From the IMG/VR virus record IMGVR_UViG_3300042540_001822, positions 124,001-188,000 of that record: a stretch of DNA of 64,000 bases. The stretch is one strand, 5' to 3'. The position numbers were made by a program, and so were the translations under genes. The notes beneath the pieces were generated by a model. The model worked only from the letters and a program-made list of their open reading frames with translations. It had not been told where the DNA came from and did not search any database. Below are positions 1 to 51,910 of this stretch, one piece after another; position 1 is the first letter of the stretch; each line of letters opens with the position of its first letter.

Positions 1-1126
1 TAGATAACGGCATTTTTATGCTTGGGTGGGATTGATAATTCTCCAATTTCCAGAAATCTGGTTTAAATTGTTCGATCTTTTGAGAAAATGGTATATCCAG
101 ATCCATCAAATAATGGTACTCGTCTTTCCCTAACATTTGTGGTAAAGAATAAGGCTTTCTTGTTAGCTGATCTTTAACCCCATCTATTTGATTCAAGTAA
201 ATGTGACAGTCTCCCATATTTGAAATGAGTTCATATGGTACCATACCAACCTCTTTAGCTATAATTGTTAATAATAGCCCATAAGATGCCAAATTAAAAG
301 GGGTCCCTAGTGGAACATCTTGACTTCTGGCATTGCACATTAAAGAGATTGCTCTGGTTGGGATATTAGATTTAGAAAGTTCAATGTGTATTTCATGCTC
401 GTTCATGTTTTCTGAATTTGAAGTGCAGTCAAAAAACTCTTCAAAGTAACTTAATCGTTCTTTAACGCTCAACTCTCTTGTATAAACTTGAAATCCATAA
501 TGACAAGGTGGAAGAGTCATCGAATCCAATTCACCTACATTCCAAGCTGAAACCATCAATCGTCTTGAGTCTGGGTTTGTTTTGAGTTCGTTGATTAGGT
601 TTTGGATTTGGTCTATTTTATTGTTTGGCCAAAATAAAGGTAGTTTATTTGGTCCAAAGTCATCTTGCCAACTTCTCCACTGCTTACCATAGATTGGACC
701 TAAATCACCCCACTTCTTAGCAAACTCATCATCTGTTTTAATTTTGTTGATAAATTCTTCTTTTGGATAAATTAGTTGTTTTTCTAATATCTGTATTGAT
801 ATCTCACTTCTGTCACCCTCAGTCCTGATAGCATGTTTATGTTTCTTTACATATGCTTTGTAACAATCACCATCCCAAATATGACAATCATTATCAACAA
901 GGTATTTAATATTTGTTTCTCCTCTTAAAAACCAAAGTAACTCAGTTACAATTGACTTCCAATGCATTTTTTTGGTTGTGAGTAATGGAAACCCCTCACT
1001 CATTTTATGACGGATTTGTCTACCAAATACTGAAATAGTACCAGTACCCGTTCTATCTTTCTTTTCCACTCCATTATCTAATATATCTTGGAGTAGTGAT
1101 TGATATTGTTTGTCTAAATTATTCAT
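1..1126 (-). CDS. thyA: Thymidylate synthase, running off the left edge within its last codons (not in ORF track)
   Basis: Manual translation: MNNLDKQYQSLLQDILDNGVEKKDRTGTGTISVFGRQ...FPLLTTKK...ELLWFLRG...LPPCHYGF...RSQDVPLGTPFNLASY...GDCHIYLNQ...YQSHPSIKMPLS. Confidence 0.97.
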   Translation of the reverse strand, partial: MNNLDKQYQSLLQDILDNGVEKKDRTGTGTISVFGRQIRHKMSEGFPLLTTKKMHWKSIVTELLWFLRGETNIKYLVDNDCHIWDGDCYKAYVKKHKHAIRTEGDRSEISIQILEKQLIYPKEEFINKIKTDDEFAKKWGDLGPIYGKQWRSWQDDFGPNKLPLFWPNNKIDQIQNLINELKTNPDSRRLMVSAWNVGELDSMTLPPCHYGFQVYTRELSVKERLSYFEEFFDCTSNSENMNEHEIHIELSKSNIPTRAISLMCNARSQDVPLGTPFNLASYGLLLTIIAKEVGMVPYELISNMGDCHIYLNQIDGVKDQLTRKPYSLPQMLGKDEYHYLMDLDIPFSQKIEQFKPDFWKLENYQSHPSIKMPLS

Positions 1127-1418
1127 CTGTCAATTCTTTAACGTATTCTTTTACAATGTAATCAGGTGCTGGTAAAATATCAAGTCGGTGTGCTATTTCT
1201 GTCAAACCAAATTCTTCATCTACCATCAATTCTTCTCTTAATGAATCTGCATCTTTCTTTGTTGGTTTATCCCAATACCCAACAAAGTGAAGTATGTTTA
1301 TCATATCACCTTCTTGGGTTGGATCAATAACTATCAATCCGTATTTAATGTCTTTTAGGTCTGGATCTTTATTCATAATCTTTGTTAAAGGAGGTATTGG
1401 TTTATCTAAATTATTCAT
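1119..1418 (-). CDS. Hypothetical protein; N-terminus (MNNLDK) shared with thyA
   Basis: ORF track; 8-bp overlap with thyA start. Confidence 0.75.
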   Translation of the reverse strand: MNNLDKPIPPLTKIMNKDPDLKDIKYGLIVIDPTQEGDMINILHFVGYWDKPTKKDADSLREELMVDEEFGLTEIAHRLDILPAPDYIVKEYVKELTDE

Positions 1419-1420
1419 CT

Positions 1421-1639
1421 TTACCTAAATTTTTTTAATCTCTCTACAATATTATTATTGATCCCAGTACAAAAATCACGTTCAAATATATTCATTAGTG
1501 CTTGTTCAGCATCAACACCGCATTCATTTGTTGCCAATGCTATACATTCATCATCTGTCTTATTGTGCCAGAATGATAAATGTTTCAAAAACCAAGCACC
1601 GTCTTCTATTATTATTTTTCTTGGTCCTTCGTTATTCAT
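1421..1639 (-). CDS. Hypothetical protein (MNNE start)
   Basis: ORF track; coupled overlap with upstream gene. Confidence 0.7.
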   Translation of the reverse strand: MNNEGPRKIIIEDGAWFLKHLSFWHNKTDDECIALATNECGVDAEQALMNIFERDFCTGINNNIVERLKKFR

Positions 1640-1817
1640 AATGTTCTAATTGTTGTTCGTTAAAAATGTGTAATAATCCATATTCATCCATTTCGGCTAC
1701 TAATCTAATTTCACCTTTTATTGTTGTGAATACGGATACAATTGTGCAAGGAAATTTATATCCTTTCGGTTTCCACGCTTTGTCTCCTACTTTAAATTTT
1801 GTGTTATTCATTTTCAT
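1632..1817 (-). CDS. Small hypothetical protein, KOW/SH3-like beta fold (FKVGDKAW...)
   Basis: ORF track; its 3' 76 bp are duplicated at 2772-2847. Confidence 0.7.
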   Translation of the reverse strand: MKMNNTKFKVGDKAWKPKGYKFPCTIVSVFTTIKGEIRLVAEMDEYGLLHIFNEQQLEHYE

Positions 1818-2091
1818 ATTTGTTAATTGTATCTTCCATCTGGTGGAACATTTGTTTAATTCTCATCCCAAGTTCATATGGGTCGGCGTACTTAACCCCT
1901 TCTAGTGTTATTGTTTGGTTGGCTTTGAACCATTGTGGTATTTTAGACCATTTCTCTTGACCCCAAAGTCCTTTATATTTTTTATACCCCACATCATGCA
2001 TTGTAACCAAACAATCAAATTTGATTTCACATACTCGTTGTGTATTTGCAACAACTTCGGGTACAGGTGTTATTTCAATTTCTTTATTCAT
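1804..2091 (-). CDS. Hypothetical protein
   Basis: ORF track; follows junction motif. Confidence 0.7.
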   Translation of the reverse strand: MNKEIEITPVPEVVANTQRVCEIKFDCLVTMHDVGYKKYKGLWGQEKWSKIPQWFKANQTITLEGVKYADPYELGMRIKQMFHQMEDTINKYENE

Positions 2092-2213
2092 AAACTTCTA
2101 TGTTCTAAATGTTTTTTCCAAATGGTTACTACCGCTTCTGTTATTGGGCCTTTTAGTTTTGACCAACGATTAATCCAGTGTTGAATTTCTTCTTTGTCAA
2201 TAAGTTTGTTCAT
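2088..2213 (-). CDS. Small hypothetical protein, 41 aa (MNKLIDKEEIQHWINRWSKLKGP...)
   Basis: Manual translation; exactly fills the gap, with 4-bp ATGA overlaps on both sides. Confidence 0.6.
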   Translation of the reverse strand: MNKLIDKEEIQHWINRWSKLKGPITEAVVTIWKKHLEHRSL

Positions 2214-2443
2214 CTTGGTAATTTGTTGTATTTATTTACGAACCAATCAATTCGAGTTATTCGCCACAAATAATAAAGAATAATCTTTTTCTTATTATTT
2301 GTCCATATTTTACTAGTCCCATTTTTATCCGAGAGGATTATATAAGGTGTCTCCACAACAATCCAAGGAGTATGAATAACTTTTCCTTTTACCTCTATGG
2401 TTTCTAACTTTAAGTCTATTGTTGGTATTTCTTCTTTACTCAT
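2210..2443 (-). CDS. Hypothetical protein
   Basis: ORF track; ATG sits in junction motif. Confidence 0.65.
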   Translation of the reverse strand: MSKEEIPTIDLKLETIEVKGKVIHTPWIVVETPYIILSDKNGTSKIWTNNKKKIILYYLWRITRIDWFVNKYNKLPR

Positions 2444-2449
2444 AACTTT

Positions 2450-2767
2450 CTATTGTTTAGTTGGTAATATCGTTATTCTACATTCTATAAAATCTACCGA
2501 TTTATTTAGTCGATGATAAATGTTAATCTCTTTTATTGGAGTCCCATCATCCAAACTCAACTCTCTTTCCTCAATCCGTAATCCCCATGTTTCGGGGAAC
2601 TCAGAATCGGTTTTACATTTGTTGATAAACTCTTGTTTTTTTAATTGTCTGTAATTTTTTTTGCCATCTCCATCATCTAACCAATTTTCTTCGGGATGAT
2701 ATACCATTTTTTCTAAATAATTTTCATACGCCTCATCAATCATCTGATTCATTTTTTCGTTATTCAT
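2450..2767 (-). CDS. MNNEK-family paralogue 1
   Basis: MNNEKMNQMIDEAYENYL...EFINKCKTDSEF..WGL.IEERELS. Confidence 0.85.
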   Translation of the reverse strand: MNNEKMNQMIDEAYENYLEKMVYHPEENWLDDGDGKKNYRQLKKQEFINKCKTDSEFPETWGLRIEERELSLDDGTPIKEINIYHRLNKSVDFIECRITILPTKQ

Positions 2768-2838
2768 AACTTTCTAATTGTTGTTCGTTAAAAATGTGTA
2801 ACAATCCATATTCATCCATTTCGGCTACTAATCTAATT

Positions 2839-3075
2839 TCACCTTTTTTTCTTTTGAACGATATCAATATATTCTTTTAATATATTCGCAGCCCTCTGAC
2901 TCGGTTTTCCATTCTCAACCGTGAACAAATACTTCTCAAAGAAATACCTCAGCGCTTCCACGTCCGATAGTTTTGCACCTGGCAATGTTTCCTTGTTCGA
3001 TTCCATACATTCTCCTGTGCAAGATTCTCCACAACTGTAAAGACATCCTTGCGTTCCTGAATAACCTATTCCCAT
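2839..3075 (-). CDS. Hypothetical protein with Cys-rich N-terminus
   Basis: ORF track. Confidence 0.6.
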   Translation of the reverse strand: MGIGYSGTQGCLYSCGESCTGECMESNKETLPGAKLSDVEALRYFFEKYLFTVENGKPSQRAANILKEYIDIVQKKKR

Positions 3076-3113
3076 ACTTTATCCTTTATGTGTTTTTTGT
3101 TATACATAATCTT

Positions 3114-3356
3114 CTATTGTTTCGTTGTATTTCCAAAGTGTGATATGTCATAGGACATTTTCTCTGTTTCTTCAACAGTATTATCATCTTTTATTTTACC
3201 AATACTTCTAGATGACACCCAAACAGTTTGATTTTGAGTAAGTAGTTTATTCACTTTTTTTGATGACTCACCATCATTAAATTGAATGGTCTTTCCTTCG
3301 TCTGTCGTGTATCCGACAATTTCACCATTATATTTTACAGGGATTTCTTTACTCAT
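3114..3356 (-). CDS. Hypothetical protein
   Basis: ORF track; junction motif at both ends. Confidence 0.7.
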   Translation of the reverse strand: MSKEIPVKYNGEIVGYTTDEGKTIQFNDGESSKKVNKLLTQNQTVWVSSRSIGKIKDDNTVEETEKMSYDISHFGNTTKQ

Positions 3357-3711
3357 AACTTTCTATTTTAGTTCCGTTGTATGTTATTGTGATTAGTTTG
3401 GTTGGGATGTTATCATTATTTAATTCTTCTTCAAGTTGTTTTCGTTTTATGTTTAAATAATATAAACCTCTAACATTGTGAGAATACTCAAATCGTTCTT
3501 CAAAACTCAACTCTCTTTCCTCAATCTTCAATCCCCATTTTTTTGAGAACTCAGAATCGGTTTTACATTTGTTTATGAACTCTTCTTTTGTTAATCTAAA
3601 TCCCAACTCTAACATTTTTTCTTTTGACATATTAGGTAAGATTCTGGCATCTTCAATTAAGTAATTCTCATACACCTCATCAATAATCTGATTGTATTTT
3701 TCGTTATTCAT
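3349..3711 (-). CDS. MNNEK-family paralogue 2
   Basis: Shared N-terminus, FINKCKTDSEF core and KLITITYNGTKIESYE tail. Confidence 0.85.
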   Translation of the reverse strand: MNNEKYNQIIDEVYENYLIEDARILPNMSKEKMLELGFRLTKEEFINKCKTDSEFSKKWGLKIEERELSFEERFEYSHNVRGLYYLNIKRKQLEEELNNDNIPTKLITITYNGTKIESYE

Positions 3712-4156
3712 ACCTTTCTATTTTAGTTCCGTTGTATGTTATTGTGATTAGTTTGGTTGGGATATTATGTTCATCACATAATTTGTTACAATAATCAAAC
3801 TCGGTCATATTAGGAGTTAAACCCGCCATCAACCATCTTTCCATCATGTCCAATTCTCTTTCCTCAATCTTTAATCCACCACCCACTTTAAAAAATGAAC
3901 GATTTGTAAGTTGAGTAAATCTTTGTTTACCATCTTTATCTGAAAATTTCACCATATACACTTTGTTTTCATCACGTTCATTTTCAGTTGATGGTACAAC
4001 ATATCTTATTTCACCAATTTCACCTTTGTCAATAGAATATCCATATTCACCATCATCTTCATTCTTTTCAATATCATATTTTAGTTCTACCAAATCACCT
4101 TTTAAGTAGTTCTCATACGCCTCATCAATAATTTGATTCATTTTTTCGTTATTCAT
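3704..4156 (-). CDS. MNNEK-family paralogue 3, chimeric (core replaced by unrelated ~75 aa)
   Basis: Keeps MNNEK N-terminus and LKIEEREL...IERYE tail; lacks FINKCKTD. Confidence 0.85.
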   Translation of the reverse strand: MNNEKMNQIIDEAYENYLKGDLVELKYDIEKNEDDGEYGYSIDKGEIGEIRYVVPSTENERDENKVYMVKFSDKDGKQRFTQLTNRSFFKVGGGLKIEERELDMMERWLMAGLTPNMTEFDYCNKLCDEHNIPTKLITITYNGTKIERYE

Positions 4157-4484
4157 GTATCCTTTTTAGTTTTTCATATTCAGGTCGAATACATTCAAAA
4201 ATTATTTCATCTGCCACCATCTGTGCTAACTGAGGAGAGCCTCCCATAGCATTCCAACCCATATCTTCGGCTATGGAATTTCTGAGAAAAAGTTTGACTG
4301 GCTTCATGTCTACACTAGGTATTTTAATTTCAACATCACATCCCAATGCACCTGCTGGTGCATCCTCGGAAGGAGCTAATCGATAGGCTTCACTGACAAT
4401 TTGAACATCGGTTCCTCCAAATGATCTTTTCATAAATTCAACTGCTATTGGAATTGCAGGAGGAACTTCTTTAATGTTTTCCAT
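4149..4484 (-). CDS. Hypothetical protein
   Basis: ORF track; coupled overlaps. Confidence 0.75.
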   Translation of the reverse strand: MENIKEVPPAIPIAVEFMKRSFGGTDVQIVSEAYRLAPSEDAPAGALGCDVEIKIPSVDMKPVKLFLRNSIAEDMGWNAMGGSPQLAQMVADEIIFECIRPEYEKLKRIHE

Positions 4485-4725
4485 TTTCTTTTATTAGTTT
4501 GTATAGAATAGATCTATCAATATGTTTAGATAGACAAGCTGCATTTATGTCTGGGTATTTTTCCTGAACGCCTTCATTTAGACAAAATTGGTAGCTCTCT
4601 TTATCGAATTGCGCCAATTCTTCATCTGTCATTTTATTCATCCATTCTTCATTGAATTCGTTTCTGATGATTGGTCTTTGCAGCAATTCTTGTATTGTTA
4701 TTGAATAATTGTTATTCTGTTCCAT
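4471..4725 (-). CDS. Hypothetical protein
   Basis: ORF track. Confidence 0.7.
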   Translation of the reverse strand: MEQNNNYSITIQELLQRPIIRNEFNEEWMNKMTDEELAQFDKESYQFCLNEGVQEKYPDINAACLSKHIDRSILYKLIKENGKH

Positions 4726-5275
4726 ATTCTCCTTTTACGATTCTACCTCGATCGATGTCGAGTTGAATCTCATTAGTGATAAAGTCGATCTCTTTTTGGA
4801 TCTCAGCTTCAACGTCCATTCCTTCTCGAAGTCGAAGCATTCCCGGATAGAAGAGAAATCCCTTCATAATCTTGTCGTTGACTGCTAGACGTTCTCCTCG
4901 GCTCATTTCCACTCGGTAACCAGGAAATCTTTCCTGTAGGCCTTTGAGGATCCGCCAGAAAGGACGACATTTCTCACCCAGTGCATTGTACTGTTCGGGG
5001 TCTTGAGAGGCAAACACCATTCCGCCGGATTCGTTGACGATGAAGTAACCTTGTCCGAATGAGTGTCCGTAAGATCCGTAGAGGTGAACTGATTCGTAAG
5101 AATGCACACTAATTCTTCCGCTTTCGTACTCGGTAACATGGTCTCCCATGTGGTTTCGATATTTACGTTTGATGGGTTGAGGTTCCATCGAAGGCTGAAA
5201 GCCTCGAATTTGATCTGCGATGGTGGTAGCCGCTACTTGTTTGACTATCGGGAATTTCAAGTTTTCGAATGACAT
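4712..5275 (-). CDS. Hypothetical protein; N-terminus LKFPIVKQVAATTIADQI recurs in huge-phage proteins
   Basis: ORF track; visibly more GC-rich than its flanks. Confidence 0.75.
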   Translation of the reverse strand: MSFENLKFPIVKQVAATTIADQIRGFQPSMEPQPIKRKYRNHMGDHVTEYESGRISVHSYESVHLYGSYGHSFGQGYFIVNESGGMVFASQDPEQYNALGEKCRPFWRILKGLQERFPGYRVEMSRGERLAVNDKIMKGFLFYPGMLRLREGMDVEAEIQKEIDFITNEIQLDIDRGRIVKGEYGTE

Positions 5276-5332
5276 TTTTAGTATGTTTTGAAAGGAGGTT
5301 TTGGCATGTTTTTCATTCTAATTAAATGGTGC

Positions 5333-5476
5333 TTATAGTTTCAGTTTTTTGATAAATTCTTCGCCAATTTCGGGGTTAAACAAAAGAGAAACCAAAATCA
5401 CCCCCGTGAAGATTATAAAAAACAGTGCAAACAAGGACGAGAGGAAGATGAAAATAAAATTAAGCAGGCTACTCAT
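5333..5476 (-). CDS. Small single-pass membrane protein, 47 aa (MSSLLNFIFIFLSSLFALFFIIFTGVILVSLLFNPE...)
   Basis: Manual translation; ATG sits in junction motif. Confidence 0.6.
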   Translation of the reverse strand: MSSLLNFIFIFLSSLFALFFIIFTGVILVSLLFNPEIGEEFIKKLKL

Positions 5477-5512
5477 AGATTTCTATTGTTCCGTTTTTAT
5501 ATGTTATTGTGA

Positions 5513-5854
5513 TTAGTTTGGTATTAATCCAAATCTAAAATAAGGTTTACCATAAGTTGCATTTGTAACTATAATCCCTTCAGATTCATTTATTTCTCTC
5601 ACATCAGATTCAGTTAATTCACTTCTGCATCGTAAGGGGATGAAGATATTGTTATCAACAGTTAATTCTAGATTCCCATTACCATCATCAACTAATTCAA
5701 GTGCATCTGGTTGGTATTTGCCACCAACAAGACATTTTCGTGTTTTTGACCAAATAACAAGAGATGGTGATTCTGTTGCTATTATTTTGGTTTGGTAAAC
5801 ACCTTTATTGATAAACCTAGTTACCGTTTCTTGTATTGTTTCTTCTTTATTCAT
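5513..5854 (-). CDS. Hypothetical protein
   Basis: ORF track; 3' end runs into an MNNEK tail remnant. Confidence 0.7.
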   Translation of the reverse strand: MNKEETIQETVTRFINKGVYQTKIIATESPSLVIWSKTRKCLVGGKYQPDALELVDDGNGNLELTVDNNIFIPLRCRSELTESDVREINESEGIIVTNATYGKPYFRFGLIPN

Positions 5855-6155
5855 AAACTTCTATTATTTCGTTTTTATAAACAACAATCAATTTATTTTT
5901 TCTTTTTGATGTTGTAATTATAACATCACCAAAATCTTCTGTATGTGGAATCAAGTCGTAAGTTTCTTTTATTAACAATCCCCACCTTTCAGAGAACTCT
6001 GAATCGGTTTTACATTTGTTTATGAAATCTTGTTTTGTTAGCGTGGGTAATTTAATTGAAGTTGGGCCAAATCCATCATATTGAGAGGTTTTAATACTAT
6101 CCCAATATCTCTCATACACCTCATCAATCATCTGATTGATTTTTTCGTTATTCAT
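5847..6155 (-). CDS. MNNEK-family paralogue 4
   Basis: MNNEKINQMIDEVYE...LTKQDFINKCKTDSEFSERWGL...IIEVYE. Confidence 0.85.
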   Translation of the reverse strand: MNNEKINQMIDEVYERYWDSIKTSQYDGFGPTSIKLPTLTKQDFINKCKTDSEFSERWGLLIKETYDLIPHTEDFGDVIITTSKRKNKLIVVYKNEIIEVYE

Positions 6156-6158
6156 GTC

Positions 6159-6560
6159 TTAATATTTGTAATAATTACCATCGTTCTCCTTATCAGTTAA
6201 AAAATAAACTTTAAATCCTTTCAGTACTGACATTGCTCTGTTCATACAGGTTTCAATAGAATCAAATTCACCCCAATTTTCAACTCTTAAAGAAAGTTCT
6301 TCATACGTCCTTAAAGATATGGGAGATGTGGTAGTTAATTTATATTTTTTATTGATAGGTGTAATAGTAAAACTTAATGGAAATTTGGAGTTATTAATCT
6401 TTCCAATAATGTATTCCTTATTTTCCATATTTAAGTGGGTTAAATCTTGACTTTCAGATTCAAAAGATATTAGACCTACTGTCGAATACCCGTTTGATGT
6501 AAATGGATTTGATAAACCTCTACTTTCAATATAATGTTTTTTCCAATTAATTATCAACAT
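6159..6560 (-). CDS. Hypothetical protein
   Basis: ORF track; ATG sits in junction motif. Confidence 0.7.
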   Translation of the reverse strand: MLIINWKKHYIESRGLSNPFTSNGYSTVGLISFESESQDLTHLNMENKEYIIGKINNSKFPLSFTITPINKKYKLTTTSPISLRTYEELSLRVENWGEFDSIETCMNRAMSVLKGFKVYFLTDKENDGNYYKY

Positions 6561-6933
6561 AACTTTCTACTATTTCGTTGTTATATGTTATTGTGATTAG
6601 TTTGGTTGGTACATTATGTTCATCACATAATTTGTTGCAATAATCAAACTCGGTCATATTAGGAGTTAAATCAGCCATTTTCCATCTTTCTTCCATAAAT
6701 AACTCTCTTTCTTCAATCTTTAGTCCCCACATTTCAGAGAACTCTGAATCGGTTTTACATTTGTTGATAAACTCTTCTTTTGTTAAGAGATTTATAAGAG
6801 CAACTCTAACTTTTTTTCCTTGTGAACGAAGTCTTTCGACTTCTTTCTTTTGAATGTCTCGTTGCGTCTCAATGTGCTTTTTATATTTCTCATACGCCTC
6901 ATCAATCATCTGATTCATTTTTTCGTTATTCAT
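6547..6933 (-). CDS. MNNEK-family paralogue 5 (start moved to the MNNEK ATG at 6933)
   Basis: Family motifs; tail DNA nearly identical to paralogue 3. Confidence 0.85.
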   Translation of the reverse strand: MNNEKMNQMIDEAYEKYKKHIETQRDIQKKEVERLRSQGKKVRVALINLLTKEEFINKCKTDSEFSEMWGLKIEERELFMEERWKMADLTPNMTEFDYCNKLCDEHNVPTKLITITYNNEIVESYVDN

Positions 6934-7687
6934 TATCTTTTTTTTCACGTCTAAACCAATTAATCATTCCATCATAAAAAACACTACCATGATTTATTGA
7001 ACCATAATCTTTGTGTTCTGCAAAATGTTCAGCATCCAACAAATCATCTTCGTTTTGTGTTGAGTTTGGTGGTTCTATATTTGATTTTCTTTTTTCTAAC
7101 TCATCCCACCATTCATCCGATGTCATATAACTCAAATCGGGATTAATCCTAATTTCTCCGGGTTCATACCCTAGTAAGATTGTTGCGGGTAATCCATAAT
7201 ACCATATTTTTCGCCCAATCTCTTCTTTCGGATTTAGAAAATTAAAAGGATGTTCTGATATTTTGCTTATCACATGCTGTGCTTCTGCTAATGACCCACC
7301 TAAATCTCCCCAATGAAATTTATAAACTTCCTTACCATTTGCTTTAATGGTGCATATCCCACCATTTCTAATGCTCCATTCATCCCACTTATATTTGGTT
7401 GAATTAAATTGTGCATAATTTACTTCCCAACAAACTCTATGAACCCCTTTATCAATGTATGGGATAAGCTCTCTTATAGTTGGTACTTCATCATCATTAT
7501 CCGAATGATAAACTGAATAGTCCAACCACCAAGTATCAGGACACCCATTCCATTTACCTAAATTGTGTTCATATCCTTCAATTGAATAAACTGGATAAAG
7601 TTTTTCTCTTATTAGAATATCAAATATTTTACGAGGTTTTCCAAATTTTTCGGTGGCCTGTTGTAATGTGTAATTTTGTTGTTCCAT
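6926..7687 (-). CDS. Hypothetical protein
   Basis: 253-aa ORF with coupled overlap. Confidence 0.8.
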   Translation of the reverse strand: MEQQNYTLQQATEKFGKPRKIFDILIREKLYPVYSIEGYEHNLGKWNGCPDTWWLDYSVYHSDNDDEVPTIRELIPYIDKGVHRVCWEVNYAQFNSTKYKWDEWSIRNGGICTIKANGKEVYKFHWGDLGGSLAEAQHVISKISEHPFNFLNPKEEIGRKIWYYGLPATILLGYEPGEIRINPDLSYMTSDEWWDELEKRKSNIEPPNSTQNEDDLLDAEHFAEHKDYGSINHGSVFYDGMINWFRREKKDNE

Positions 7688-7690
7688 AAC

Positions 7691-7993
7691 TTATTTTTCA
7701 AATTTTTTTAATTCATCGTATAAATCTTGATTTAACTCTTTGAGTTTATTTCCCAGTTCTAAAAGAGTGTGTTCGCTCCAATATCCTTTTCCATCTTCGG
7801 GTTCAAAATAGTAAAATCCATCAACGTCAGGAACAAAATAACCTATCAATTTTCCACCATGTTTCTTGGTGGTGATTTTAAAACTATTGTTTGATAGTTC
7901 GTAGTTTAACATTGAGTTTGTAGCTTTGTAAAGTACATGTCCATTAGGATAACTGGAGTAAAATTCTATCTTCTTTTTTAAAACATTCCCCAT
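7691..7993 (-). CDS. Hypothetical protein (start uncertain)
   Basis: ORF track. Confidence 0.65.
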   Translation of the reverse strand: MGNVLKKKIEFYSSYPNGHVLYKATNSMLNYELSNNSFKITTKKHGGKLIGYFVPDVDGFYYFEPEDGKGYWSEHTLLELGNKLKELNQDLYDELKKFEK

Positions 7994-8399
7994 TTATTAT
8001 CATATCCCCACTTTCATTTCTTTCAGTTTCAACGGTACAATAAATCCATCTGAGTTGTTGAAGGTGAGATACAACGCTAGATATTTTACACCATTTAGGT
8101 TTAAACATATCACTTGCCGTGTCTATATCATCTAACAACTTAAACATAAATTCAAGTTTATGTGTTAATGTTGCAATATTAATACCTCTACGTTGTGATA
8201 AATCAATAGCATAAGTATCTTCAATCATTTTAACTAATTCATCATCAACAGAGTGAGCCTCTTTTGCTTTGTTATAGCAATACTTCACATAATTTTTATT
8301 ACCTTCTATCCCTTCATACCCTTCGAGAATATCTTCAATTGATGATAACACATCTCTTAATTTGTTTGCTGAATATAGCATTTTGTCTTTGTCATTCAT
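7944..8399 (-). CDS. Hypothetical protein
   Basis: ORF track; ATG sits in junction motif. Confidence 0.75.
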   Translation of the reverse strand: MNDKDKMLYSANKLRDVLSSIEDILEGYEGIEGNKNYVKYCYNKAKEAHSVDDELVKMIEDTYAIDLSQRRGINIATLTHKLEFMFKLLDDIDTASDMFKPKWCKISSVVSHLQQLRWIYCTVETERNESGDMIINGECFKKEDRILLQLS

Positions 8400-8419
8400 A
8401 ACTTTCTATTGTTTACAGT

Positions 8420-9001
8420 TCAATTAGGATTAACAAGAAAATCAGGTTTTTTGTAATACTCCCATACTTCATCTAATTGTTTTGGGTCTTTCACCCACAT
8501 AATCCAATCATCTTTTTTAATTTCTTCCTCCAACACATCAATGTAAAATGTTTTCGGTGTAAATGGAAATCCTTTAATTTCCAAAATACTGCGAAATGGG
8601 TTTGTATTGTTGATAGCATCTTCTCGGGTCATATAAATAGTTCCCGACCAAGTTGTTCCATTAGGACATCTTTTGATAATAGCGTCATTATATGTAACCT
8701 TACCATCGTTATCCTTAAACAATCCACTTTCTCTTTTATTTTGATACCAGGGTTCACCTGCTATATCACTAATATCTCCCCACTCTTCATCTTTACCTGT
8801 AATAGGCCCCAGTGGTTTGTAGTTAGCTAATTTGTGAAATAACGATGCTACAATCGGGGCTGAACCACCTGAGTGTCCTTGCTTTGCGAAGACTTCCATT
8901 AGTTCCATAACCGCCTCTCCGATTGCTCCTCCATAGTCAGAATCTTCATCAAAGAAGCCTGCTAATTCTAATTCAAATTTTGCGTGTGATGTTGTGCTCA
9001 T
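8420..9001 (-). CDS. Conserved phage hypothetical protein (FAKQGHSGGSA motif)
   Basis: ORF track; GHSGxSA motif recognised from phage hypotheticals. Confidence 0.8.
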   Translation of the reverse strand: MSTTSHAKFELELAGFFDEDSDYGGAIGEAVMELMEVFAKQGHSGGSAPIVASLFHKLANYKPLGPITGKDEEWGDISDIAGEPWYQNKRESGLFKDNDGKVTYNDAIIKRCPNGTTWSGTIYMTREDAINNTNPFRSILEIKGFPFTPKTFYIDVLEEEIKKDDWIMWVKDPKQLDEVWEYYKKPDFLVNPN

Positions 9002-9005
9002 AGTT

Positions 9006-9626
9006 TTATTTTAAATTTGTAAAGTTTACTTCTCCGTTGGGCATACCAATGTTGATGTCAGTAGTAGTATTAGTCCACCTTATTCCAGTTCCATATTTTT
9101 TTGGATTAGGGACCATCTTATTACCCATAATACAACCACATATACCACTTCCACCATTTGTTGGATTACAAGAGCAAATACTTCCATAAGGGACTTCATC
9201 GGGTTCTGAACTTAGACTGAATCCACCTGGATGACTTTTGTCCCAAGTTGGAATATTTGGGATAGTTTCATCGTGTGGAATAGATCTATCATCTTGAATT
9301 TTTTCAAGAGTATCCAATTGTTTTTTGAATGCCTCTCTTTCAGTTTCTAAAACTAAAATATCCCTATCAAGTGATTTTCTTTCAGTTTCTAAAACTAAAA
9401 TATCCATATCAAGTGATTTGATATGTGATTTGATATCACTAATTGCTCTTTCAATTTTGTTCATAGTATTTGTTTTTTCAGTTTTGTAAAAACCAAGACC
9501 TACAACTTCTTCCCAAAGTTGCTTCATAGTTGTTCTAATGGAGTCTTTTTGATTTTGGTCTAATAAACCAAAATCGTGCCTATATCTCATCGCCATAGAG
9601 TCAATCAGTTTTGGGTCTGGTTTCAT
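9006..9626 (-). CDS. Hypothetical coiled-coil protein with internal 14-aa duplication and CSCNP...CGC motif
   Basis: ORF track. Confidence 0.75.
   Translation of the reverse strand: MKPDPKLIDSMAMRYRHDFGLLDQNQKDSIRTTMKQLWEEVVGLGFYKTEKTNTMNKIERAISDIKSHIKSLDMDILVLETERKSLDRDILVLETEREAFKKQLDTLEKIQDDRSIPHDETIPNIPTWDKSHPGGFSLSSEPDEVPYGSICSCNPTNGGSGICGCIMGNKMVPNPKKYGTGIRWTNTTTDINIGMPNGEVNFTNLK
9336..9419. repeat. 42-bp tandem duplication encoding KSLD(M/R)DILVLETER twice
   Basis: tctttcagtttctaaaactaaaatatcc(c/a)tatcaagtgattt at 9336 and 9378, one mismatch. Confidence 0.95.
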
Positions 9627-9628
9627 AA

Positions 9629-9916
9629 TTAATATAGTTGGGAAATTTTTATTTCTCTTTCTACTTCTATCAAAAAATTACTTTTCGGATGATTAGCCCA
9701 ATAAGCAGTTTGGGATTCATCATCATCTTCCCTCATAAACTGAAATATTTCTTTCACAACAGTCAATGCACATTCTTTGTAGTAAATGTTCGTTGGGATA
9801 GGTTTCATTGTGCCATCAGAAAAATCATTTGATTGATTTTTACTGAACATAACTGAATCTATCAGTTGTTCGGCTTTTTCTCTTGGTGTAATCGTGATTG
9901 GTTTGTATTTAGGCAT
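9629..9916 (-). CDS. Hypothetical protein, paralogue of 13593..13877
   Basis: Both contain QFMREDDDES.TAYWANHPKSNF. Confidence 0.85.
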   Translation of the reverse strand: MPKYKPITITPREKAEQLIDSVMFSKNQSNDFSDGTMKPIPTNIYYKECALTVVKEIFQFMREDDDESQTAYWANHPKSNFLIEVEREIKISQLY

Positions 9917-9927
9917 ACATTTGTTTT

Positions 9928-10293
9928 TTATCGGTCGAAGGTTTGTATTTTTGCATCAACCTCTCTTAATTCAGACCAGGTTCCCAGATAAGTTACCGCT
10001 CTGACTTTTCTATTATCAATCCAAACGTACTCTTGGCCATCCTTAATTGTTGGTTTGTCCATAATTAATCCGTGATATTTGAATCCATTTAAACTCAACC
10101 ATTCTTCTGTGACCATTCTGTCTTTTGATTCTCGAGCAGTGAAAAAGGTTATTATGTTTCCTTCATCAAACCACTTGTTGATGATCTTTTGTGCATCCAT
10201 AAAAGGTTTGGCACTCGAATACAAATGTGAATCTTCATTCGAAATATCATCACAGATAGTTCCATCAATGTCAATCAAAAAAATTCTGTTCAT
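9928..10293 (-). CDS. HAD-superfamily phosphatase
   Basis: FLIDIDGT motif I, FFTAR motif II, KP, WIDN. Confidence 0.85.
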   Translation of the reverse strand: MNRIFLIDIDGTICDDISNEDSHLYSSAKPFMDAQKIINKWFDEGNIITFFTARESKDRMVTEEWLSLNGFKYHGLIMDKPTIKDGQEYVWIDNRKVRAVTYLGTWSELREVDAKIQTFDR

Positions 10294-10311
10294 TTTTAAT
10301 CCATTTAAAGT

Positions 10312-10635
10312 TTAAACCTCCAACCAATTGAATATTTGGGCAAAGTCTGAATCTGATTTTACCCTTTCCCAAAATTCATCTTCTGTCATTATCCTGGTAC
10401 AATTTTGATTTGGATCATCAATTAGGTACCTGTAATTAACTTCCTCTAATGAAGAAGCAAAATCAAGATATCTGTTGTACATTATCGAAATACCATTGGG
10501 ATCTATATAGGATTCTTCCATCGAAGAAAGATCATCCCCTGTGTCTAATGGATGTTCCGATTTCATTCGTTCTTTTCCCCTTACCCATAGGAAGGCTAAC
10601 ACTAAAGAAACAATAAAAATTACAGTTAGAATCAT
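10312..10635 (-). CDS. Membrane-anchored protein with an MNNEK-like core
   Basis: N-terminal hydrophobic helix; YNRYL...MTEDEFWERVKSDSDFAQIF resembles LTKEEFINKCKTDSEFSE.W. Confidence 0.7.
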   Translation of the reverse strand: MILTVIFIVSLVLAFLWVRGKERMKSEHPLDTGDDLSSMEESYIDPNGISIMYNRYLDFASSLEEVNYRYLIDDPNQNCTRIMTEDEFWERVKSDSDFAQIFNWLEV

Positions 10636-10667
10636 AATTTAATTTTGAATAAAAGTAATTGAAAAAA

Positions 10668-10889
10668 TCAATCATCCTCAAGACCGTCTAACAAAGTTAC
10701 ATCCCAATCGGAAAATTCCGTGCCCAACCCCGAAAGGTCGGGAGACTCCTTCAAAATTTTGTCTTTAATCCAAGACTCATAACTTGGAATTTCATCTTCA
10801 CTTTTGAAGCTACCACTATCTTTCGACTGCTGGATAAAGTTATGATATTGTGTTTTTAAATTTATCATGTTCTTTAATTTAAACCTCAT
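10668..10889 (-). CDS. Hypothetical protein
   Basis: ORF track. Confidence 0.65.
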   Translation of the reverse strand: MRFKLKNMINLKTQYHNFIQQSKDSGSFKSEDEIPSYESWIKDKILKESPDLSGLGTEFSDWDVTLLDGLEDD

Positions 10890-11118
10890 CTGGATCGTCG
10901 TTTTCCCAAGAATCTCTAAATTTAGGTTTCGGCTTCAAGTCAACCTCATCCTCTGAATAAAATTCTCCAAAATAGAAAGATCCATCTGGACCAATTTGAA
11001 AATCATCATTCATTTGGTTGGGAGAAAATGAAACCTTCTTTTTCCATTCCTCAAAGTTCAAATTAGATCCTGGATTTTTATCCAAAAATTCCTGATATGA
11101 ATTTTGGGAAAATTTCAT
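10879..11118 (-). CDS. Hypothetical acidic protein
   Basis: ORF track. Confidence 0.65.
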   Translation of the reverse strand: MKFSQNSYQEFLDKNPGSNLNFEEWKKKVSFSPNQMNDDFQIGPDGSFYFGEFYSEDEVDLKPKPKFRDSWENDDPDEV

Positions 11119-11405
11119 TGTTTACTTGGCAAAAAAGAAAAAGTAAGTAAGAAAAGTAAACATCCCAAATAAATCAAAAGTTCTGCTTTCCAAAAAGACA
11201 AATCCCCAGCTCTTCGATTTCTAAAATTTAAAAGATTAAAAGATTTTATGTAATTACCTTCTATCCAAAGCTCTTCGGATTTAGAGAAATCTATTGTTAC
11301 CGAAGATCCCATAGCTCTAAAATAGAAAAAAAATCCCAATAACCATCCTTCAGCTTGTACGTGAAAGATTCCACAGGGTTTATATTTCCATTTGAACATA
11401 ATCAA
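11115..11405 (-). CDS. Hypothetical protein with C-terminal hydrophobic segment
   Basis: ORF track. Confidence 0.65.
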   Translation of the reverse strand: MIMFKWKYKPCGIFHVQAEGWLLGFFFYFRAMGSSVTIDFSKSEELWIEGNYIKSFNLLNFRNRRAGDLSFWKAELLIYLGCLLFLLTFSFLPSKQ

Positions 11406-11477
11406 TTGATTTTGAATATAAAACCAATTTTATACGAATAAAAAATAAAATAATTTCGATTTTTTTGGGTAAAAATC

Positions 11478-11711
11478 TTAAAGATCGGATGAAATCTTTT
11501 TCAAGATTCTCCAATCCTGAACGAAAGAATCTTTCGAATATCTATTGGAGGTTCCTAAATTAGAAGAATCTAATTCCTCCACCAGAATGGTTGTGGGTGT
11601 TTTCTCTATAACCTTGATTTTCATGTAGCTAGAAAAAAATTGAATCTCCTCGTTGGTTTCGGAATTCGGACCCAACAAATAAATTTCTCCCGGGATTAAA
11701 TCAAACCACAT
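11478..11711 (-). CDS. Hypothetical protein
   Basis: ORF track. Confidence 0.65.
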   Translation of the reverse strand: MWFDLIPGEIYLLGPNSETNEEIQFFSSYMKIKVIEKTPTTILVEELDSSNLGTSNRYSKDSFVQDWRILKKISSDL

Positions 11712-12200
11712 TTAGCAGTGAATTTTTTGAATCCTTTTAAGATGTCTACCCCCTTCAAAATCAGTTTTTAAAAAAATTTCTATTGATTTTATTGCCTCGA
11801 ACGTAGAAATAAATCTGGCAGGCAAACAAAGTAGATTTGCGTCGTTGTGTTTTCTTGAAAGAGCAGTAATATCAGAGTTCCAGCACAATGCTGCTCTAAC
11901 ATTTGGCCATTTGTTTGCAGTTATTGCAACCCCATTACCAGATCCGCAAATTAAAATTCCAATTCTGTCCGTGTCAATCAATCCTGCAACCCGGTGTGCA
12001 TAGTCTGGATAGTCTGTTGATTCTTGGTGGTAGGTACCTACGTCAATTACCTCATAATCATTTTCGCAAAACCAATCCAAGATTTTTGTTTTCAATTCAA
12101 ATCCTGCATGGTCTGAGCCTATTATGATGGTTTGGATATGATTTGACATGGAAGAAGAATAGATTTTTTTTCTTAATTTTCCATTCTTATATTTAAACAA
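11712..12200 (-). CDS. rpiB: Ribose-5-phosphate isomerase B (true start probably MSNHIQ)
   Basis: GSDHAG, DYPD, GILICGSGNG, ANK, RAAL, RKHNDAN, FEGGRH motifs. Confidence 0.95.
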   Translation of the reverse strand: MFKYKNGKLRKKIYSSSMSNHIQTIIIGSDHAGFELKTKILDWFCENDYEVIDVGTYHQESTDYPDYAHRVAGLIDTDRIGILICGSGNGVAITANKWPNVRAALCWNSDITALSRKHNDANLLCLPARFISTFEAIKSIEIFLKTDFEGGRHLKRIQKIHC

Positions 12201-13877: not shown

Positions 13878-14390
13878 TTATTTCCAGTCAATTTTAGGAC
13901 AATACTTGTAATAGGTTGCTTTAACCATTTCAACAGTAATATTAGAACTTTTTTCTTCTTTCGGTAGATTTTTCCTCCCCCATTTTCTTTCTTTTCTTTC
14001 TTTTATTTTATCTTGGATGTATTCAATAAACCAAGCACAACCCCAAGTCAAACCTACCGCCCATACAAAAAAACCGTAAATAATTAAATTTTCTAAAATA
14101 GATCCTTTATGTGGTGTGTGCCAAAATAACATAATGGGACTGAGAGCTGCAATTAAAAGCAAAAGTATAAACCAAGAAATGAAACTTATCCAAATTCTAT
14201 TACCAAGTGATTCGTTATACGTATCTTTATCTATAATAACATAAGGAAGGGAAAAAATAAATAGTGGGATTGCGAATACATAAGCTATTACCAATTTCCA
14301 AAAGTATGGACATAAGTTGGTTGGAAGTTCACTTGTTCTGTAAAACCAACGGAAGAGTTTTGCTGAGATTGAGTTTTTGTTGAGTTTCAT
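13878..14390 (-). CDS. Multi-pass membrane protein (NLCPYFW; YYKYCPKIDW)
   Basis: Three hydrophobic segments. Confidence 0.8.
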   Translation of the reverse strand: MKLNKNSISAKLFRWFYRTSELPTNLCPYFWKLVIAYVFAIPLFIFSLPYVIIDKDTYNESLGNRIWISFISWFILLLLIAALSPIMLFWHTPHKGSILENLIIYGFFVWAVGLTWGCAWFIEYIQDKIKERKERKWGRKNLPKEEKSSNITVEMVKATYYKYCPKIDWK

Positions 14391-14761
14391 ACTTTTACAA
14401 GTTTAAATTTTTCACCACCAATTACAATTTCTTTACCTTCGCAAGATTTGGGTCGGTTGTCTTTGATTATACCTTTTGAATTCTCAAAGTAGATTAGATT
14501 ACCTTGAGAATCCCATTCCTGCTTTAACCAATACCCAGTTGAATCCTCAAAGTAGATTCTATTACCTTGAGAATCCCATTCCTTCTTTGCCCAATATTTC
14601 TTTGAATTCTCATAGTAGATTTCATTACCTTGAGAATCGTATTCACTCTTTACCCAACGTTTATTTGAATTCTCAAAGTAGATTTTTTTGCCATTCGTGT
14701 CTAGGATTACCAATGTACCATTGGTCTTGAAATCCCATTTAATTTGTTGTGCGATTGTCAT
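14387..14761 (-). CDS. Beta-repeat family member, 3 internal units, 124 aa
   Basis: xWxKxE(W/Y)DSQGNxIYxE(N/D)S repeats, YD/RHS-like. Confidence 0.9.
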   Translation of the reverse strand: MTIAQQIKWDFKTNGTLVILDTNGKKIYFENSNKRWVKSEYDSQGNEIYYENSKKYWAKKEWDSQGNRIYFEDSTGYWLKQEWDSQGNLIYFENSKGIIKDNRPKSCEGKEIVIGGEKFKLVKV

Positions 14762-15069
14762 ACTTTTACAAGTTTAAATTTTTCACCATCGATTTCTACT
14801 ACTTTATTTTCGCAAGATTTAGGTCGGTTGTCTATGATTTTACCATTTGAATTCTCATAGTAGATTCTATTACCTTGAGAATCCCATTCTCGTTTTGACC
14901 AATATCCATCTGAATCATGATAGTAGGTTTGGTTACCTTGAGAATCGTATTCACACTTTCCCCAATATCCATCTGAATTCTCATAGTAGATTCTATTACC
15001 ATTCTTGTCTTTAATTTCCAAGTAACCGTTGGTCTCAAAGTCCCAGTTGATTTGTTGTCCTATTGTCAT
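14758..15069 (-). CDS. Beta-repeat family member, 2 units, 103 aa
   Basis: Same family motifs. Confidence 0.9.
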   Translation of the reverse strand: MTIGQQINWDFETNGYLEIKDKNGNRIYYENSDGYWGKCEYDSQGNQTYYHDSDGYWSKREWDSQGNRIYYENSNGKIIDNRPKSCENKVVEIDGEKFKLVKV

Positions 15070-50342: not shown

Positions 50343-50364
50343 TTTCAATTATTTAAAATTTTTG

Positions 50365-50449
50365 CGGAGAGGGAGGGATTCGAACCCCCGGATCCTTGCG
50401 GATCGGCTGTTTTCAAGACAGCTCTCGTAAACCACTTGAGTACCTCTCC
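50365..50449 (-). tRNA. tRNA-Ser, anticodon TGA; CCA not encoded
   Basis: Acceptor GGAGAGG/CCTCTCC; anticodon arm GCTGT-CTTGAAA-ACAGC; long variable arm GATCC-GCAA-GGATC; T-loop TTCGAAT. Confidence 0.95.
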
Positions 50450-51906: not shown

Positions 51907-51910
51907 GTTG

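What the first reader, a model, noticed from the sequence alone, without database searches (positions are those of the whole stretch)
1637..8414. Cassette-like region: 11 gene starts share an ~18-bp junction motif (AAACAATAGAAAGTTATG)
Seen: plus-strand cata-actttcta-ttgttt or close variants at 1637, 2089, 2441, 2765, 3105, 3354, 3709, 5474, 5852, 6558 and 8397. The 2441 and 8397 copies are identical over 18 bp. Each contains the ATG of the next gene, many of them unrelated. The motif is the 3' end of the MNNEK gene (...IESYE*) but is read in other frames by other upstream genes (...TKQ*). I did not notice it elsewhere in the window. Inference: a portable stop/RBS/start junction acting as a microhomology site, so accessory genes are inserted, swapped or deleted as expression-ready cassettes, integron-like but without attC hairpins.
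Basis: partly seen in the sequence, partly recalled or inferred. Interest (0 to 1): 0.72.

Follow-up and report, generated by a model that had tools for sequence, protein, structure and literature searches.

The report
Portable gene junction between phage cassettes
A roughly 26-base signal holding stop codons in all three frames plus a start codon sits between many unrelated small genes in one variable region of an uncultured lake phage and its relatives, and gene blocks have been swapped at it.

Summary
All 11 copies exist, all on the minus (coding) strand. The core TAGAANNNTATG occurs 14 times in the 219-kb genome, 11 of them in window 1637-8414. Ten of the 11 start a gene and one (3105) is a dead junction.

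The exact 18-mer also occurs in more than 115 IMG/VR loci, often 2-12 copies within a few kb. There it precedes at least 61 unrelated gene families and follows upstream genes that end in any of the three frames. It is at chance level in 596 Gb of prokaryote genomes and absent from cultured phages.

The element spans about -16 to +9 around the ATG. It is A-rich and unstructured. It carries TAG at -9, TGA at +1 and TAA at +5.

Homology between related phages breaks at it far more often than at motif-less gene starts, including one clean three-way crossover.

I found no promoter, terminator, hairpin or site-specific recombinase, so "integron-like" is not supported. The best reading is a translation-ready junction that also serves as a short homology patch for general recombination. 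It works like the PeSLs of T4-type phages and looks like the start-associated sequences of Cluster K mycobacteriophages. The biochemical role is inferred, not shown.

The parts
8397..8414 (-). Junction motif, exact 18-mer AAACAATAGAAAGTTATG. It starts g7944 (7944-8399). It is intergenic: the stop of g8420 lies 21 nt upstream.
   Evidence: Homology with L056 (94.8% identity) begins exactly at 8414. Loose ends of variant contigs at 8414.
6558..6575 (-). Junction motif (2 mismatches). It starts g6159 (6159-6560). The upstream MNNEK paralog g6547 reads through it and stops at 6547.
5852..5869 (-). Junction motif, TAGAAGTTTATG allele. It starts g5513 (5513-5854). Upstream g5847 ends ...IEVYE* at TAA +5.
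   Evidence: The same allele is the lineage consensus in L118/L155 and L120.
5474..5526 (-). Junction motif (5474-5491) plus a remnant of the MNNEK 3' box, lying after the unrelated g5513. It starts g5333 (5333-5476).
   Evidence: In L099 an intact MNNEK-type gene precedes the g5333 homolog (92.9% identity).
3709..3726 (-). Junction motif between two MNNEK paralogs. g3704 ends ...IERYE* and g3349 starts.
3354..3371 (-). Junction motif. g3349 ends ...IESYE* at TAA +5 and g3114 (3114-3356) starts.
3105..3122 (-). Dead junction. g3114 ends ...TKQ* at the TAG, but the ATG opens only a 13-codon ORF. The next gene, g2839, starts at 3075.
2765..2782 (-). Junction motif. It starts MNNEK paralog g2450 (2450-2767). 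Upstream is a truncated copy of g1632 (2760-2867).
2441..2458 (-). Junction motif, exact 18-mer. g2450 ends ...TKQ* at the TAG and g2210 (2210-2443) starts.
   Evidence: Variant contigs diverge at 2435 and 2463.
2089..2106 (-). Junction motif (degenerate). g2088 ends at TGA +1 (ATGA overlap) and g1804 (1804-2091) starts.
1637..1654 (-). Junction motif (degenerate). g1632 ends ...LEHYE* at TAA +5 and g1421 (1421-1639) starts.
2450..6933 (-). Span holding five paralogs of the 'MNNEK' family (2450-2767, 3349-3711, 3704-4156, 5847-6155, 6547-6933). Each is followed by a junction motif. Their shared 5' end, central box and 3' box are further dispersed repeats.
   Evidence: The family has 5,291 cluster representatives and no Pfam match.
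1632..1730 (-). 3' part of g1632 plus its junction, duplicated at about 2760-2858 (87.5% identity at the protein level).
1119..8414 (-). The variable region as a whole: about 23 small minus-strand genes between a Tad3-like gene (8420-9001) and thyA (2-1126). None of the 20 genes scanned has a PHROGs hit apart from the flanking g8420, and none of those 20 passes a curated Pfam cut-off apart from g8420; g5333, g2088 and the g2760 fragment were not scanned.

Best explanation
The motif is the core of a portable gene junction about 26 nt long: AAAACAATAGAAAGTTATGA(A/G)TAAAG, from -16 to +9 around the ATG. It is shared by a large uncultured clade of big lake phages that are distantly T4-like and probably infect Bacteroidota.

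It packs into one unstructured, G-poor stretch:
- a stop codon for each reading frame (TAG at -9, TGA at +1, TAA at +5);
- the A-rich upstream pattern that SD-less ribosomes of the Bacteroidia type prefer;
- the start codon of the next gene.

Any gene placed upstream is therefore terminated within a few bases of the next start, and any gene placed downstream is expression-ready inside a long polycistronic message.

The same sequence recurs at many junctions and in many phages. It therefore also gives general homologous recombination a short patch of identity, as do the conserved boxes of the abundant MNNEK paralogs. Crossovers in these patches insert, delete, replace and reorder whole genes within a genome and between co-infecting relatives.

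Shown: the anatomy, the clade-wide conservation, the use of all three frames, the confinement to one variable region, and the coincidence of homology breakpoints with the motif.

Inferred: that it drives translation re-initiation, and that it causes the crossovers rather than merely marking where they survive.
For: Anatomy and position
- Copies are strand-specific: 376 on the gene strand against 13 on the other.
- The ATG opens an ORF with a median of 86 codons, and only 11 of 191 are under 30 codons. In 14 of 17 chance hits in prokaryote genomes the ATG opens 13 codons or fewer.
- Upstream ORFs end at TAA +5 (83), TAG -9 (38) and TGA +1 (10).
- Stops in all three frames occur in 70% of 270 distinct junctions, against 1.6% of motif-less starts. 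Outside the searched 18-mer, TGA +1 is present in 96% against 64%, and a stop at +5 in 80% against 17%.

Constraint at the nucleotide level
- In 143 contexts without the MNNEK tail, conservation begins sharply at -16 and fades after +9.
- Third-codon positions are as conserved as the others: 0.95 against 0.95.
- In 44 orthologous junction pairs the motif is about 0.9 identical while the flanks are 0.63-0.8.

Translation context
- Genome-wide starts lack a Shine-Dalgarno sequence (GGAG in 1.2%) and are A-rich at -14 to -11 and -5 to -3. This is the pattern reported for Flavobacterium johnsoniae (PMC6847099).
- The motif has A at -15 to -13, -11, -10 and -6 to -4.
- There is no stable RNA fold, no excess of promoter-like or terminator-like sites and no Rfam match.

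Recombination
- Breakpoint enrichment as given.
- The L056 crossover lies inside the motif.
- Closely related pairs break at +7 to +14 or at -19 relative to the ATG.
- 9 of the 20 listed loose ends of variant contigs lie within 10 nt of a motif, where 5.7% is expected.
- The block g7944-g6926 is 94.8% identical to L056, while the neighbouring backbone gene is about 71% identical.
- A weak RecA/UvsX-like gene is present and no site-specific recombinase was found.
Against: - Nothing here measures translation. G at -3 is not favourable in the F. johnsoniae reporter work.
- The motif is used only in one variable region and not by the other roughly 300 genes. It is therefore not needed for expression in general, and some class-specific role may be missed.
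- Breakpoints at gene boundaries are expected from selection for intact genes whatever the mechanism. 10.9% of motif-less starts carry them too.
- The loci are not independent, and most were collected through the motif itself.
- Many breakpoints in close pairs lie elsewhere.
- 18-26 nt is short for efficient homologous recombination.
- A linkage test across the junction was confounded by paralogy.
Confidence: 0.55

Rival explanations
1. The motif is an operator on the mRNA (or DNA) for a phage-encoded factor that controls this gene class as a regulon. Candidates are a translational repressor of the RegA kind or an endoribonuclease of the RegB kind. Under this reading recombination at the motif is a by-product.
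For: - More positions are conserved than the generic initiation pattern explains: T-9, G-7, G-3, T-2 and T-1.
- The motif is restricted to one region per genome.
- There are lineage-specific alleles, and copies within a locus are slightly more alike than copies between loci (3.27 against 3.71 differences, 0 of 2000 permutations).
- T4 RegA sites are A+U-rich, unstructured, include the AUG and have a 5' A tract. The SELEX consensus aaAAUUGUUAUGUAA shares GUUAUG with the motif (PMC3014915).
Against: - There is no RegA homolog (PF01818) in the 88%-complete genome, although the control genomes could not validate that search.
- The stops in three frames and the use of all frames by upstream genes are not explained by an operator.
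- Copies in this genome have decayed at many positions yet still head intact genes.
Confidence: 0.2
2. The motif has no function of its own. It is the inherited tail-to-head junction of tandem MNNEK paralogs (...TIESYE* / MNKEQ...), spread by duplication and kept similar by recent common descent and gene conversion. Other genes have simply landed inside the array.
For: - All five MNNEK genes here are followed by it.
- 90 of 233 junction contexts carry the MNNEK 3' box, and the consensus downstream of the ATG resembles the family's N-terminus.
- The family is huge.
- Copies in this genome are decaying and one is dead.
- An ordinary tandem array elsewhere in the window (14387-16014) shows that such junction repeats arise by duplication alone.
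Against: - 117 of 229 distinct junctions have neither a MNNEK tail upstream nor a MNNEK start downstream.
- In those contexts conservation starts abruptly at -16.
- The motif stays about 0.9 identical where flanking coding sequence has fallen to 0.63-0.8, with no relaxation at wobble positions.
- The stops at +1 and +5 are kept in 96% and 80% of junctions in front of unrelated proteins.
Confidence: 0.15
3. It is a site-specific recombination system, integron-like. A dedicated recombinase recognises the motif and excises and integrates cassettes as circles.
For: - Direct repeats of one orientation flank single genes.
- Breakpoints lie inside the motif.
Against: - No tyrosine or serine recombinase was found in the genome, and the controls rang in 14 of 14 and 12 of 14 reference genomes.
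- There is no inverted repeat or hairpin.
- Breakpoints also occur in other shared boxes.
- No circle junction with a long flank was seen in the contig data, though contigs are a poor test.
Confidence: 0.05
4. It is a promoter for leaderless or short-leader transcripts, as in PeSLs, read by host or phage RNA polymerase.
For: - It has a fixed position next to the start and a single orientation.
- PeSLs set a precedent for regulatory cassettes at each small gene.
Against: - The element ends 0-3 nt before the ATG, which leaves no room for a -10 element at the usual distance.
- Sigma-70-like sites show no excess (45 against 55 expected).
- There is no Bacteroidota-type TTTG/TAnnTTTG promoter on the gene strand in window 1-12000.
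- There are no terminators between the genes.
Confidence: 0.05

Closest known systems
PeSLs (promoter-early stem-loops) of T4-type phages (Arbiol et al. 2010, PMC2839356; Comeau et al. 2014, PMC4122927)
   Same: - Short conserved regulatory cassettes repeated between small ORFan genes in hyperplastic regions.
- Indels and replacements between relatives end in them.
- They are read as substrates for homologous recombination that shuffles expression-ready modules.
   Different: - PeSLs are a sigma-70 promoter plus a G+C stem-loop terminator, followed by a Shine-Dalgarno sequence. This element has none of these.
- This element acts, if at all, at the level of translation. It overlaps the coding ends of both neighbours, carries stops in three frames and is only about 26 nt long.
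- Mini-circles have not been shown here.
Start-associated sequences (SAS) of Cluster K mycobacteriophages (Pope et al. 2011, PMC3203893)
   Same: - An asymmetric conserved motif in one orientation, a few bases from the ATG of many unrelated non-structural genes.
- Conserved across a phage cluster and absent from host genomes.
- Sometimes contains the upstream stop codon.
- About half the sites have an extended upstream part.
- Function unknown; a role in translation has been proposed.
   Different: - SAS is 13 bp, G+C-rich, contains the AGGAG Shine-Dalgarno core and lies 3-7 bp before the start. Its extension is an inverted repeat.
- This element is A-rich with no Shine-Dalgarno core, includes the ATG itself and the first codons, and encodes stops in all three frames.
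- It is confined to one region of a few kb, and it coincides with recombination breakpoints. I saw no report of that last feature in the SAS passages I read.
Integron attC / gene cassettes
   Same: Single promoterless genes in one orientation, separated by a repeated boundary element, forming a variable array.
   Different: There is no integrase, no attC hairpin or imperfect inverted repeat, and no attI/Pc platform. The boundary lies inside coding sequence.
RegA translational operators of T4 (review PMC3014915)
   Same: Unstructured, A+U-rich, with a 5' A tract, and includes the AUG of many early genes. Shares GUUAUG with the SELEX consensus.
   Different: T4 sites are loosely conserved, whereas this one is nearly invariant. 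No RegA homolog was found. RegA sites have no known link to stops in three frames or to recombination.

Membership tests
PeSL (T4-type promoter-early stem-loop cassette) | Contains a sigma-70-type early promoter (-35/-10) | tested here: not met
   Promoter-like sites number 45 against 55.2 expected, and none coincides with the motif. There is no Bacteroidota-type promoter on the gene strand in window 1-12000.
PeSL (T4-type promoter-early stem-loop cassette) | Contains a stable stem-loop acting as terminator or attenuator | tested here: not met
   81-nt folds around six copies give -1.3 to -9 kcal/mol, with z-scores of -1.35 to +1.36. Terminator-like sites are at the chance level.
PeSL (T4-type promoter-early stem-loop cassette) | Repeated in hyperplastic regions, with indels and replacements between relatives ending in the element | tested here: met
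PeSL (T4-type promoter-early stem-loop cassette) | Forms mini-circles by recombination between neighbouring copies | not testable with these tools
   Only assembled contigs of metagenomes could be laid. The joints seen have short flanks inside repeats.
Start-associated sequence (SAS), Cluster K mycobacteriophages | Asymmetric motif in one orientation, within a few bases of the start codon of many unrelated genes, conserved across the phage group | tested here: met
Start-associated sequence (SAS), Cluster K mycobacteriophages | The sequence GGGATAGGAGCCC, with a Shine-Dalgarno core pairing to the 16S rRNA | tested here: not met
   The sequence is different and has no GGAG. The genome as a whole lacks Shine-Dalgarno sequences. 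Only AGAAAG is complementary to the last six bases of the F. johnsoniae-type 16S tail, as inferred from the oligonucleotide used in PMC7797042. This is a lead, not a test.
Integron gene cassette array | Tyrosine recombinase (IntI) encoded next to or within the element's genome | tested here: not met
   PF00589 gives 0 hits in G000 and the control rang in 14 of 14 genomes. PF00239 also gives 0 hits. The genome is 88% complete.
Integron gene cassette array | attC sites with imperfect inverted repeats that fold as hairpins | tested here: not met
RegA-type translational operator | A RegA-family repressor (PF01818) encoded by the phage | tested here: inconclusive
   There were 0 candidates in G000, but the family rang in none of the control genomes, so the search was not validated.
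RegA-type translational operator | Unstructured A/U-rich site overlapping the AUG | tested here: met

The most novel reading that the evidence does not exclude
The junction is a clade-wide adaptor for a recombinase-free exchange network of cassettes. Any ORF flanked by two copies can be moved between co-infecting phages by ordinary homologous recombination, and it arrives already terminated, initiated and in phase. The sequence would then be kept nearly invariant by selection on cassette mobility, possibly together with a dedicated factor that reads it. The region next to a Thoeris-inhibitor homolog would be a nursery and marketplace for counter-defence and other ORFan genes in phages of SD-less hosts.
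Probability: 0.35. Interest if true: 0.85.

Novelty: new variant of a known kind. Interest (0 to 1): 0.68.

Why it matters
How phages gain, lose and trade their many small genes of unknown function is only partly understood. PeSLs showed one route in coliphages, built on promoters and terminators.

Here the same outcome seems to be reached with a different device: a translational junction that suits hosts whose ribosomes ignore Shine-Dalgarno sequences.

If this holds, it would:
- give a simple sequence tag for finding variable, probably host-interaction, gene cassettes in metagenomic phage genomes (more than 60 families already);
- provide a natural "universal linker" for polycistronic expression in Bacteroidota;
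- offer a test case for how short a shared sequence can be and still organise mosaic evolution.

Tried and rejected
- **Generic ribosome-binding signal:** rejected. The core occurs 14 times in 219 kb, 11 of them in this region, and genome-wide starts show only a loose A-rich pattern.
- **Host-derived signal:** rejected. There are 17 single hits in 596 Gb of prokaryote genomes, and 14 are not followed by an ORF.
- **Promoter, terminator or known RNA:** nothing above chance.
- **Site-specific recombinase:** none found.
- **RegA:** no hit, but the search was unvalidated.
- **gp23 capsid family:** no hit, also unvalidated.
- **Cultured relatives:** none hold the region, the MNNEK family or the junction.
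- **PHROGs and Pfam on the region's genes:** no significant hit on the 20 genes scanned apart from the flanking Tad3 domain; g5333, g2088 and the g2760 fragment were not scanned. Pfam on 55 cassette families gave one DUF.
- **Fold of the MNNEK family:** a confident model (pLDDT 88) but no PDB match by Foldseek.
- **Reads:** only assembled contigs were available. Joints have short flanks inside repeats and cannot show circles or deletions. No RNA 5' ends could be read.
- **Linkage test across junctions (k-mer sharing of the two flanks):** 0.98 unlinked for motif junctions against 0.85 for motif-less ones. It is confounded by the paralogs and was not used.
- **Complementarity of AGAAAG to the 16S 3' end:** noted as a lead only. 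The spacing to the AUG (3 nt) is not that of a Shine-Dalgarno site.

Full report
**Setting**

The window is part of a 219,475-bp IMG/VR virus record, 36% G+C and about 88% complete. All genes in the window lie on the minus strand.

The phage is only distantly T4-like. Its topoisomerase II is 28% identical to T4-group proteins. Its DNA polymerase is closest to uncultured huge phages, Prevotella Lak phages and Chryseobacterium phage MA9V-1.

Gene starts genome-wide lack Shine-Dalgarno sequences (GGAG in 1.2%). They are A-rich at -14 to -11 and at -5 to -3. This is the pattern described for Flavobacterium johnsoniae (PMC6847099). A Bacteroidota host is therefore likely; this is an inference.

The phage is common in lake metagenomes from many studies.

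**The observation**

All 11 sites exist in gene sense.
- The 18-mer with up to 3 mismatches gives 8 hits, against 0.42 expected.
- The core TAGAANNNTATG finds all 11 sites.
- In the whole genome the core occurs 14 times on the gene strand and never on the other strand. Two of the three copies outside the region are followed by ORFs of only 9 and 13 codons.
- Ten of the 11 copies start ORFs of 47-151 codons. The copy at 3105 is a dead junction.
- Upstream genes stop in the motif in all three frames: TAA at +5 (five sites), TAG at -9 (two sites) and TGA at +1 (g2088). Two copies are intergenic.

The region (1119-8414) holds about 23 small genes between a Tad3-like gene and thyA. Five of them are paralogs of one family ("MNNEK"), and each of these is followed by the motif. 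No PHROGs family matched the 20 genes scanned apart from the flanking g8420, and none of them passes a curated Pfam cut-off apart from g8420's Tad3 domain; g5333, g2088 and the g2760 fragment were not scanned.

**Beyond the window**

Many loci carry 2-6 copies within a few kb.

The contexts show many unrelated sequences on both sides. Variants with up to 4 mismatches lie 376 times on the same strand and 13 times on the other.

Among 201 distinct junctions:
- the ATG opens an ORF with a median of 86 codons;
- upstream ORFs end at TAA +5 (83), TAG -9 (38) or TGA +1 (10).

Loci fetched through the MNNEK protein rather than through the motif still carry it in 66 of 79 cases. One such locus has 12 copies in 4.8 kb.

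In four large relatives of 217-321 kb, the copies cluster in one stretch of 0.6-2.2 kb each.

The 19-mer occurs 17 times, always singly, in 596 Gb of prokaryote genomes. In 14 of those 17 the ATG opens 13 codons or fewer. This serves as an empirical chance background.

No cultured phage has the junction or the MNNEK family.

**Anatomy**

In 143 contexts without the MNNEK tail, conservation begins abruptly at -16 and fades after +9. The consensus is AAAACAATAGAAAGTTATGA(A/G)TAAAG.

In 90 further contexts a second box at -50 to -25 (the family's ...PTKLITITY tail) is also conserved. Its wobble positions are almost as fixed as the rest, 0.89 against 0.93.

In orthologous junction pairs the motif is about 0.9 identical while the flanks are 0.63-0.8.

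Stops in all three frames are present in 70% of 270 junctions, against 1.6% of motif-less starts. The two stops that lie outside the searched 18-mer are present in 96% and 80% of junctions, against 64% and 17%.

The element is G-poor and does not fold. There is no excess of promoter-like or terminator-like sites, no Bacteroidota-type promoter on the gene strand within 12 kb, and no Rfam match.

Lineage-specific alleles exist, for example TAGAAGTTTATG. Copies within a locus are slightly more alike than copies between loci.

**What the cassettes are**

The 182 distinct proteins that follow the motif fall into 61 families. Of 55 representatives, 54 have no Pfam match.

The MNNEK family has 5,291 cluster representatives, all "hypothetical".

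**Recombination**

Ends of HSPs at 88% identity or more between loci pile up at the motif. 5' ends fall at -25 to -11 and 3' ends at 0 to +14. Between 24% and 36% lie within 25 nt of the ATG, against 1.9% of random positions.

As a control for "any gene boundary", 52% of motif-bearing small-gene starts have a breakpoint within 25 nt, against 10.9% of motif-less ones (odds ratio 8.9). The loci are not independent.

A clean case is L056. It carries the g2088-like gene, then the motif, then the g7944-g6926 block at 94.8% identity. Homology to the window starts exactly at 8414. In the window itself g2088 precedes g1804, and g7944 follows g8420. The three-way alignment places the crossover inside the motif.

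L099 has an intact MNNEK gene where the window has g5513 plus a 45-nt remnant.

In closely related pairs, breaks lie at +7 to +14 or at -19. Others lie in the central box of MNNEK paralogs or elsewhere.

In lake metagenomes, contigs of variant strains diverge from the window at 2435, 2463, 2756, 2768, 3711, 3730 and 8414. That is 9 of the 20 listed loose ends within 10 nt of a motif, where 5.7% is expected. The sequence beyond 8414 is the g2088-like end, as in L056.

The genome has no tyrosine or serine recombinase and one weak RecA/UvsX-like gene.

**Interpretation**

The best reading is a translation-ready junction that also acts as a short homology patch for general recombination.
- It works like a PeSL (PMC2839356, PMC4122927) but fails the two structural tests for membership, promoter and stem-loop.
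- It looks like a start-associated sequence of Cluster K mycobacteriophages (PMC3203893), but with another sequence, no Shine-Dalgarno core, stops in three frames and a link to breakpoints.
- It is not integron-like in mechanism.

An operator for a RegA- or RegB-like factor is the main rival. It would explain why more positions are fixed than initiation alone needs, and why only this gene class carries the motif.

A pure by-product of MNNEK tandem duplication is unlikely. Half of the junctions involve no MNNEK gene on either side, and conservation there is sharp and independent of codon position.

**Limits**

- No experiment bears on translation, binding or crossover formation.
- Most loci were collected through the motif.
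- Breakpoints at gene boundaries are partly expected from selection for intact genes.
- The only read data were assembled contigs.

Noticed in passing
window 8420-9001 (minus): The gene just upstream of the cassette region has an N-terminal Tad3 domain (Pfam PF25185, type I Thoeris inhibitor; E 1.9e-36, 125 bits) plus about 75 further residues. This suggests the region holds counter-defence genes.
   Followed up: partly
window 2450-6933 (five paralogs); proteins P0001-P0120: The 'MNNEK' family of proteins of roughly 100-150 aa has 5,291 cluster representatives in public data, no Pfam or PHROGs family and no cultured-phage member. The AlphaFold model is confident (pLDDT 88, pTM 0.71) but Foldseek finds no PDB match.
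   Followed up: partly
window 707-847 (thyA) against the central box of the MNNEK genes: A 21-residue box of the MNNEK family (EEFINKCKTDSEFSxKWG) is 76% identical to ThyA residues 120-140 of the same phage (hhalign probability 96%, E 2.8e-9). One database relative is annotated as a thymidylate synthase fusion. thyA borders the variable region, and in 13 related junctions thyA is itself preceded by the motif.
   Followed up: partly
window 14387-16014 (minus); also about 25100-27100 and genome 59.7-61 kb: A second tandem array: five paralogs (MTIAQQIKWDF ... GEKFKLVKV*) with internal YxENSxGxW/DSQGN repeats, joined by ATGA overlaps. Here the repeated junction is simply shared by homologous neighbours, in contrast to the finding.
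   Followed up: partly
window 51910-52347 and 50364-50449 (minus): ARAGORN calls a tmRNA-like gene (tag VPQNSSTLSNPAGSGPIPFRSL*) and a tRNA-Ser(tga). The tmRNA call was not checked against Rfam.
   Followed up: no
genome 77-113 kb and 40467-40671 (outside the window): The 14-mer TTGCAGATTGCATG occurs 8 times dispersed over 36 kb on the gene strand. GGGCAGAGTCTATG occurs 8 times, mostly 24 nt (or multiples of 12) apart, probably a tandem repeat inside a gene.
   Followed up: no
window 57894-59060: The family-B DNA polymerase match covers only the C-terminal half of the Pfam model in a 388-aa ORF, so the polymerase may be split into two genes.
   Followed up: no
L005, L011, L042, L069: Some relatives have two exact motif copies only 105-161 nt apart. 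These enclose mini-ORFs, which may be nearly empty cassettes.
   Followed up: no
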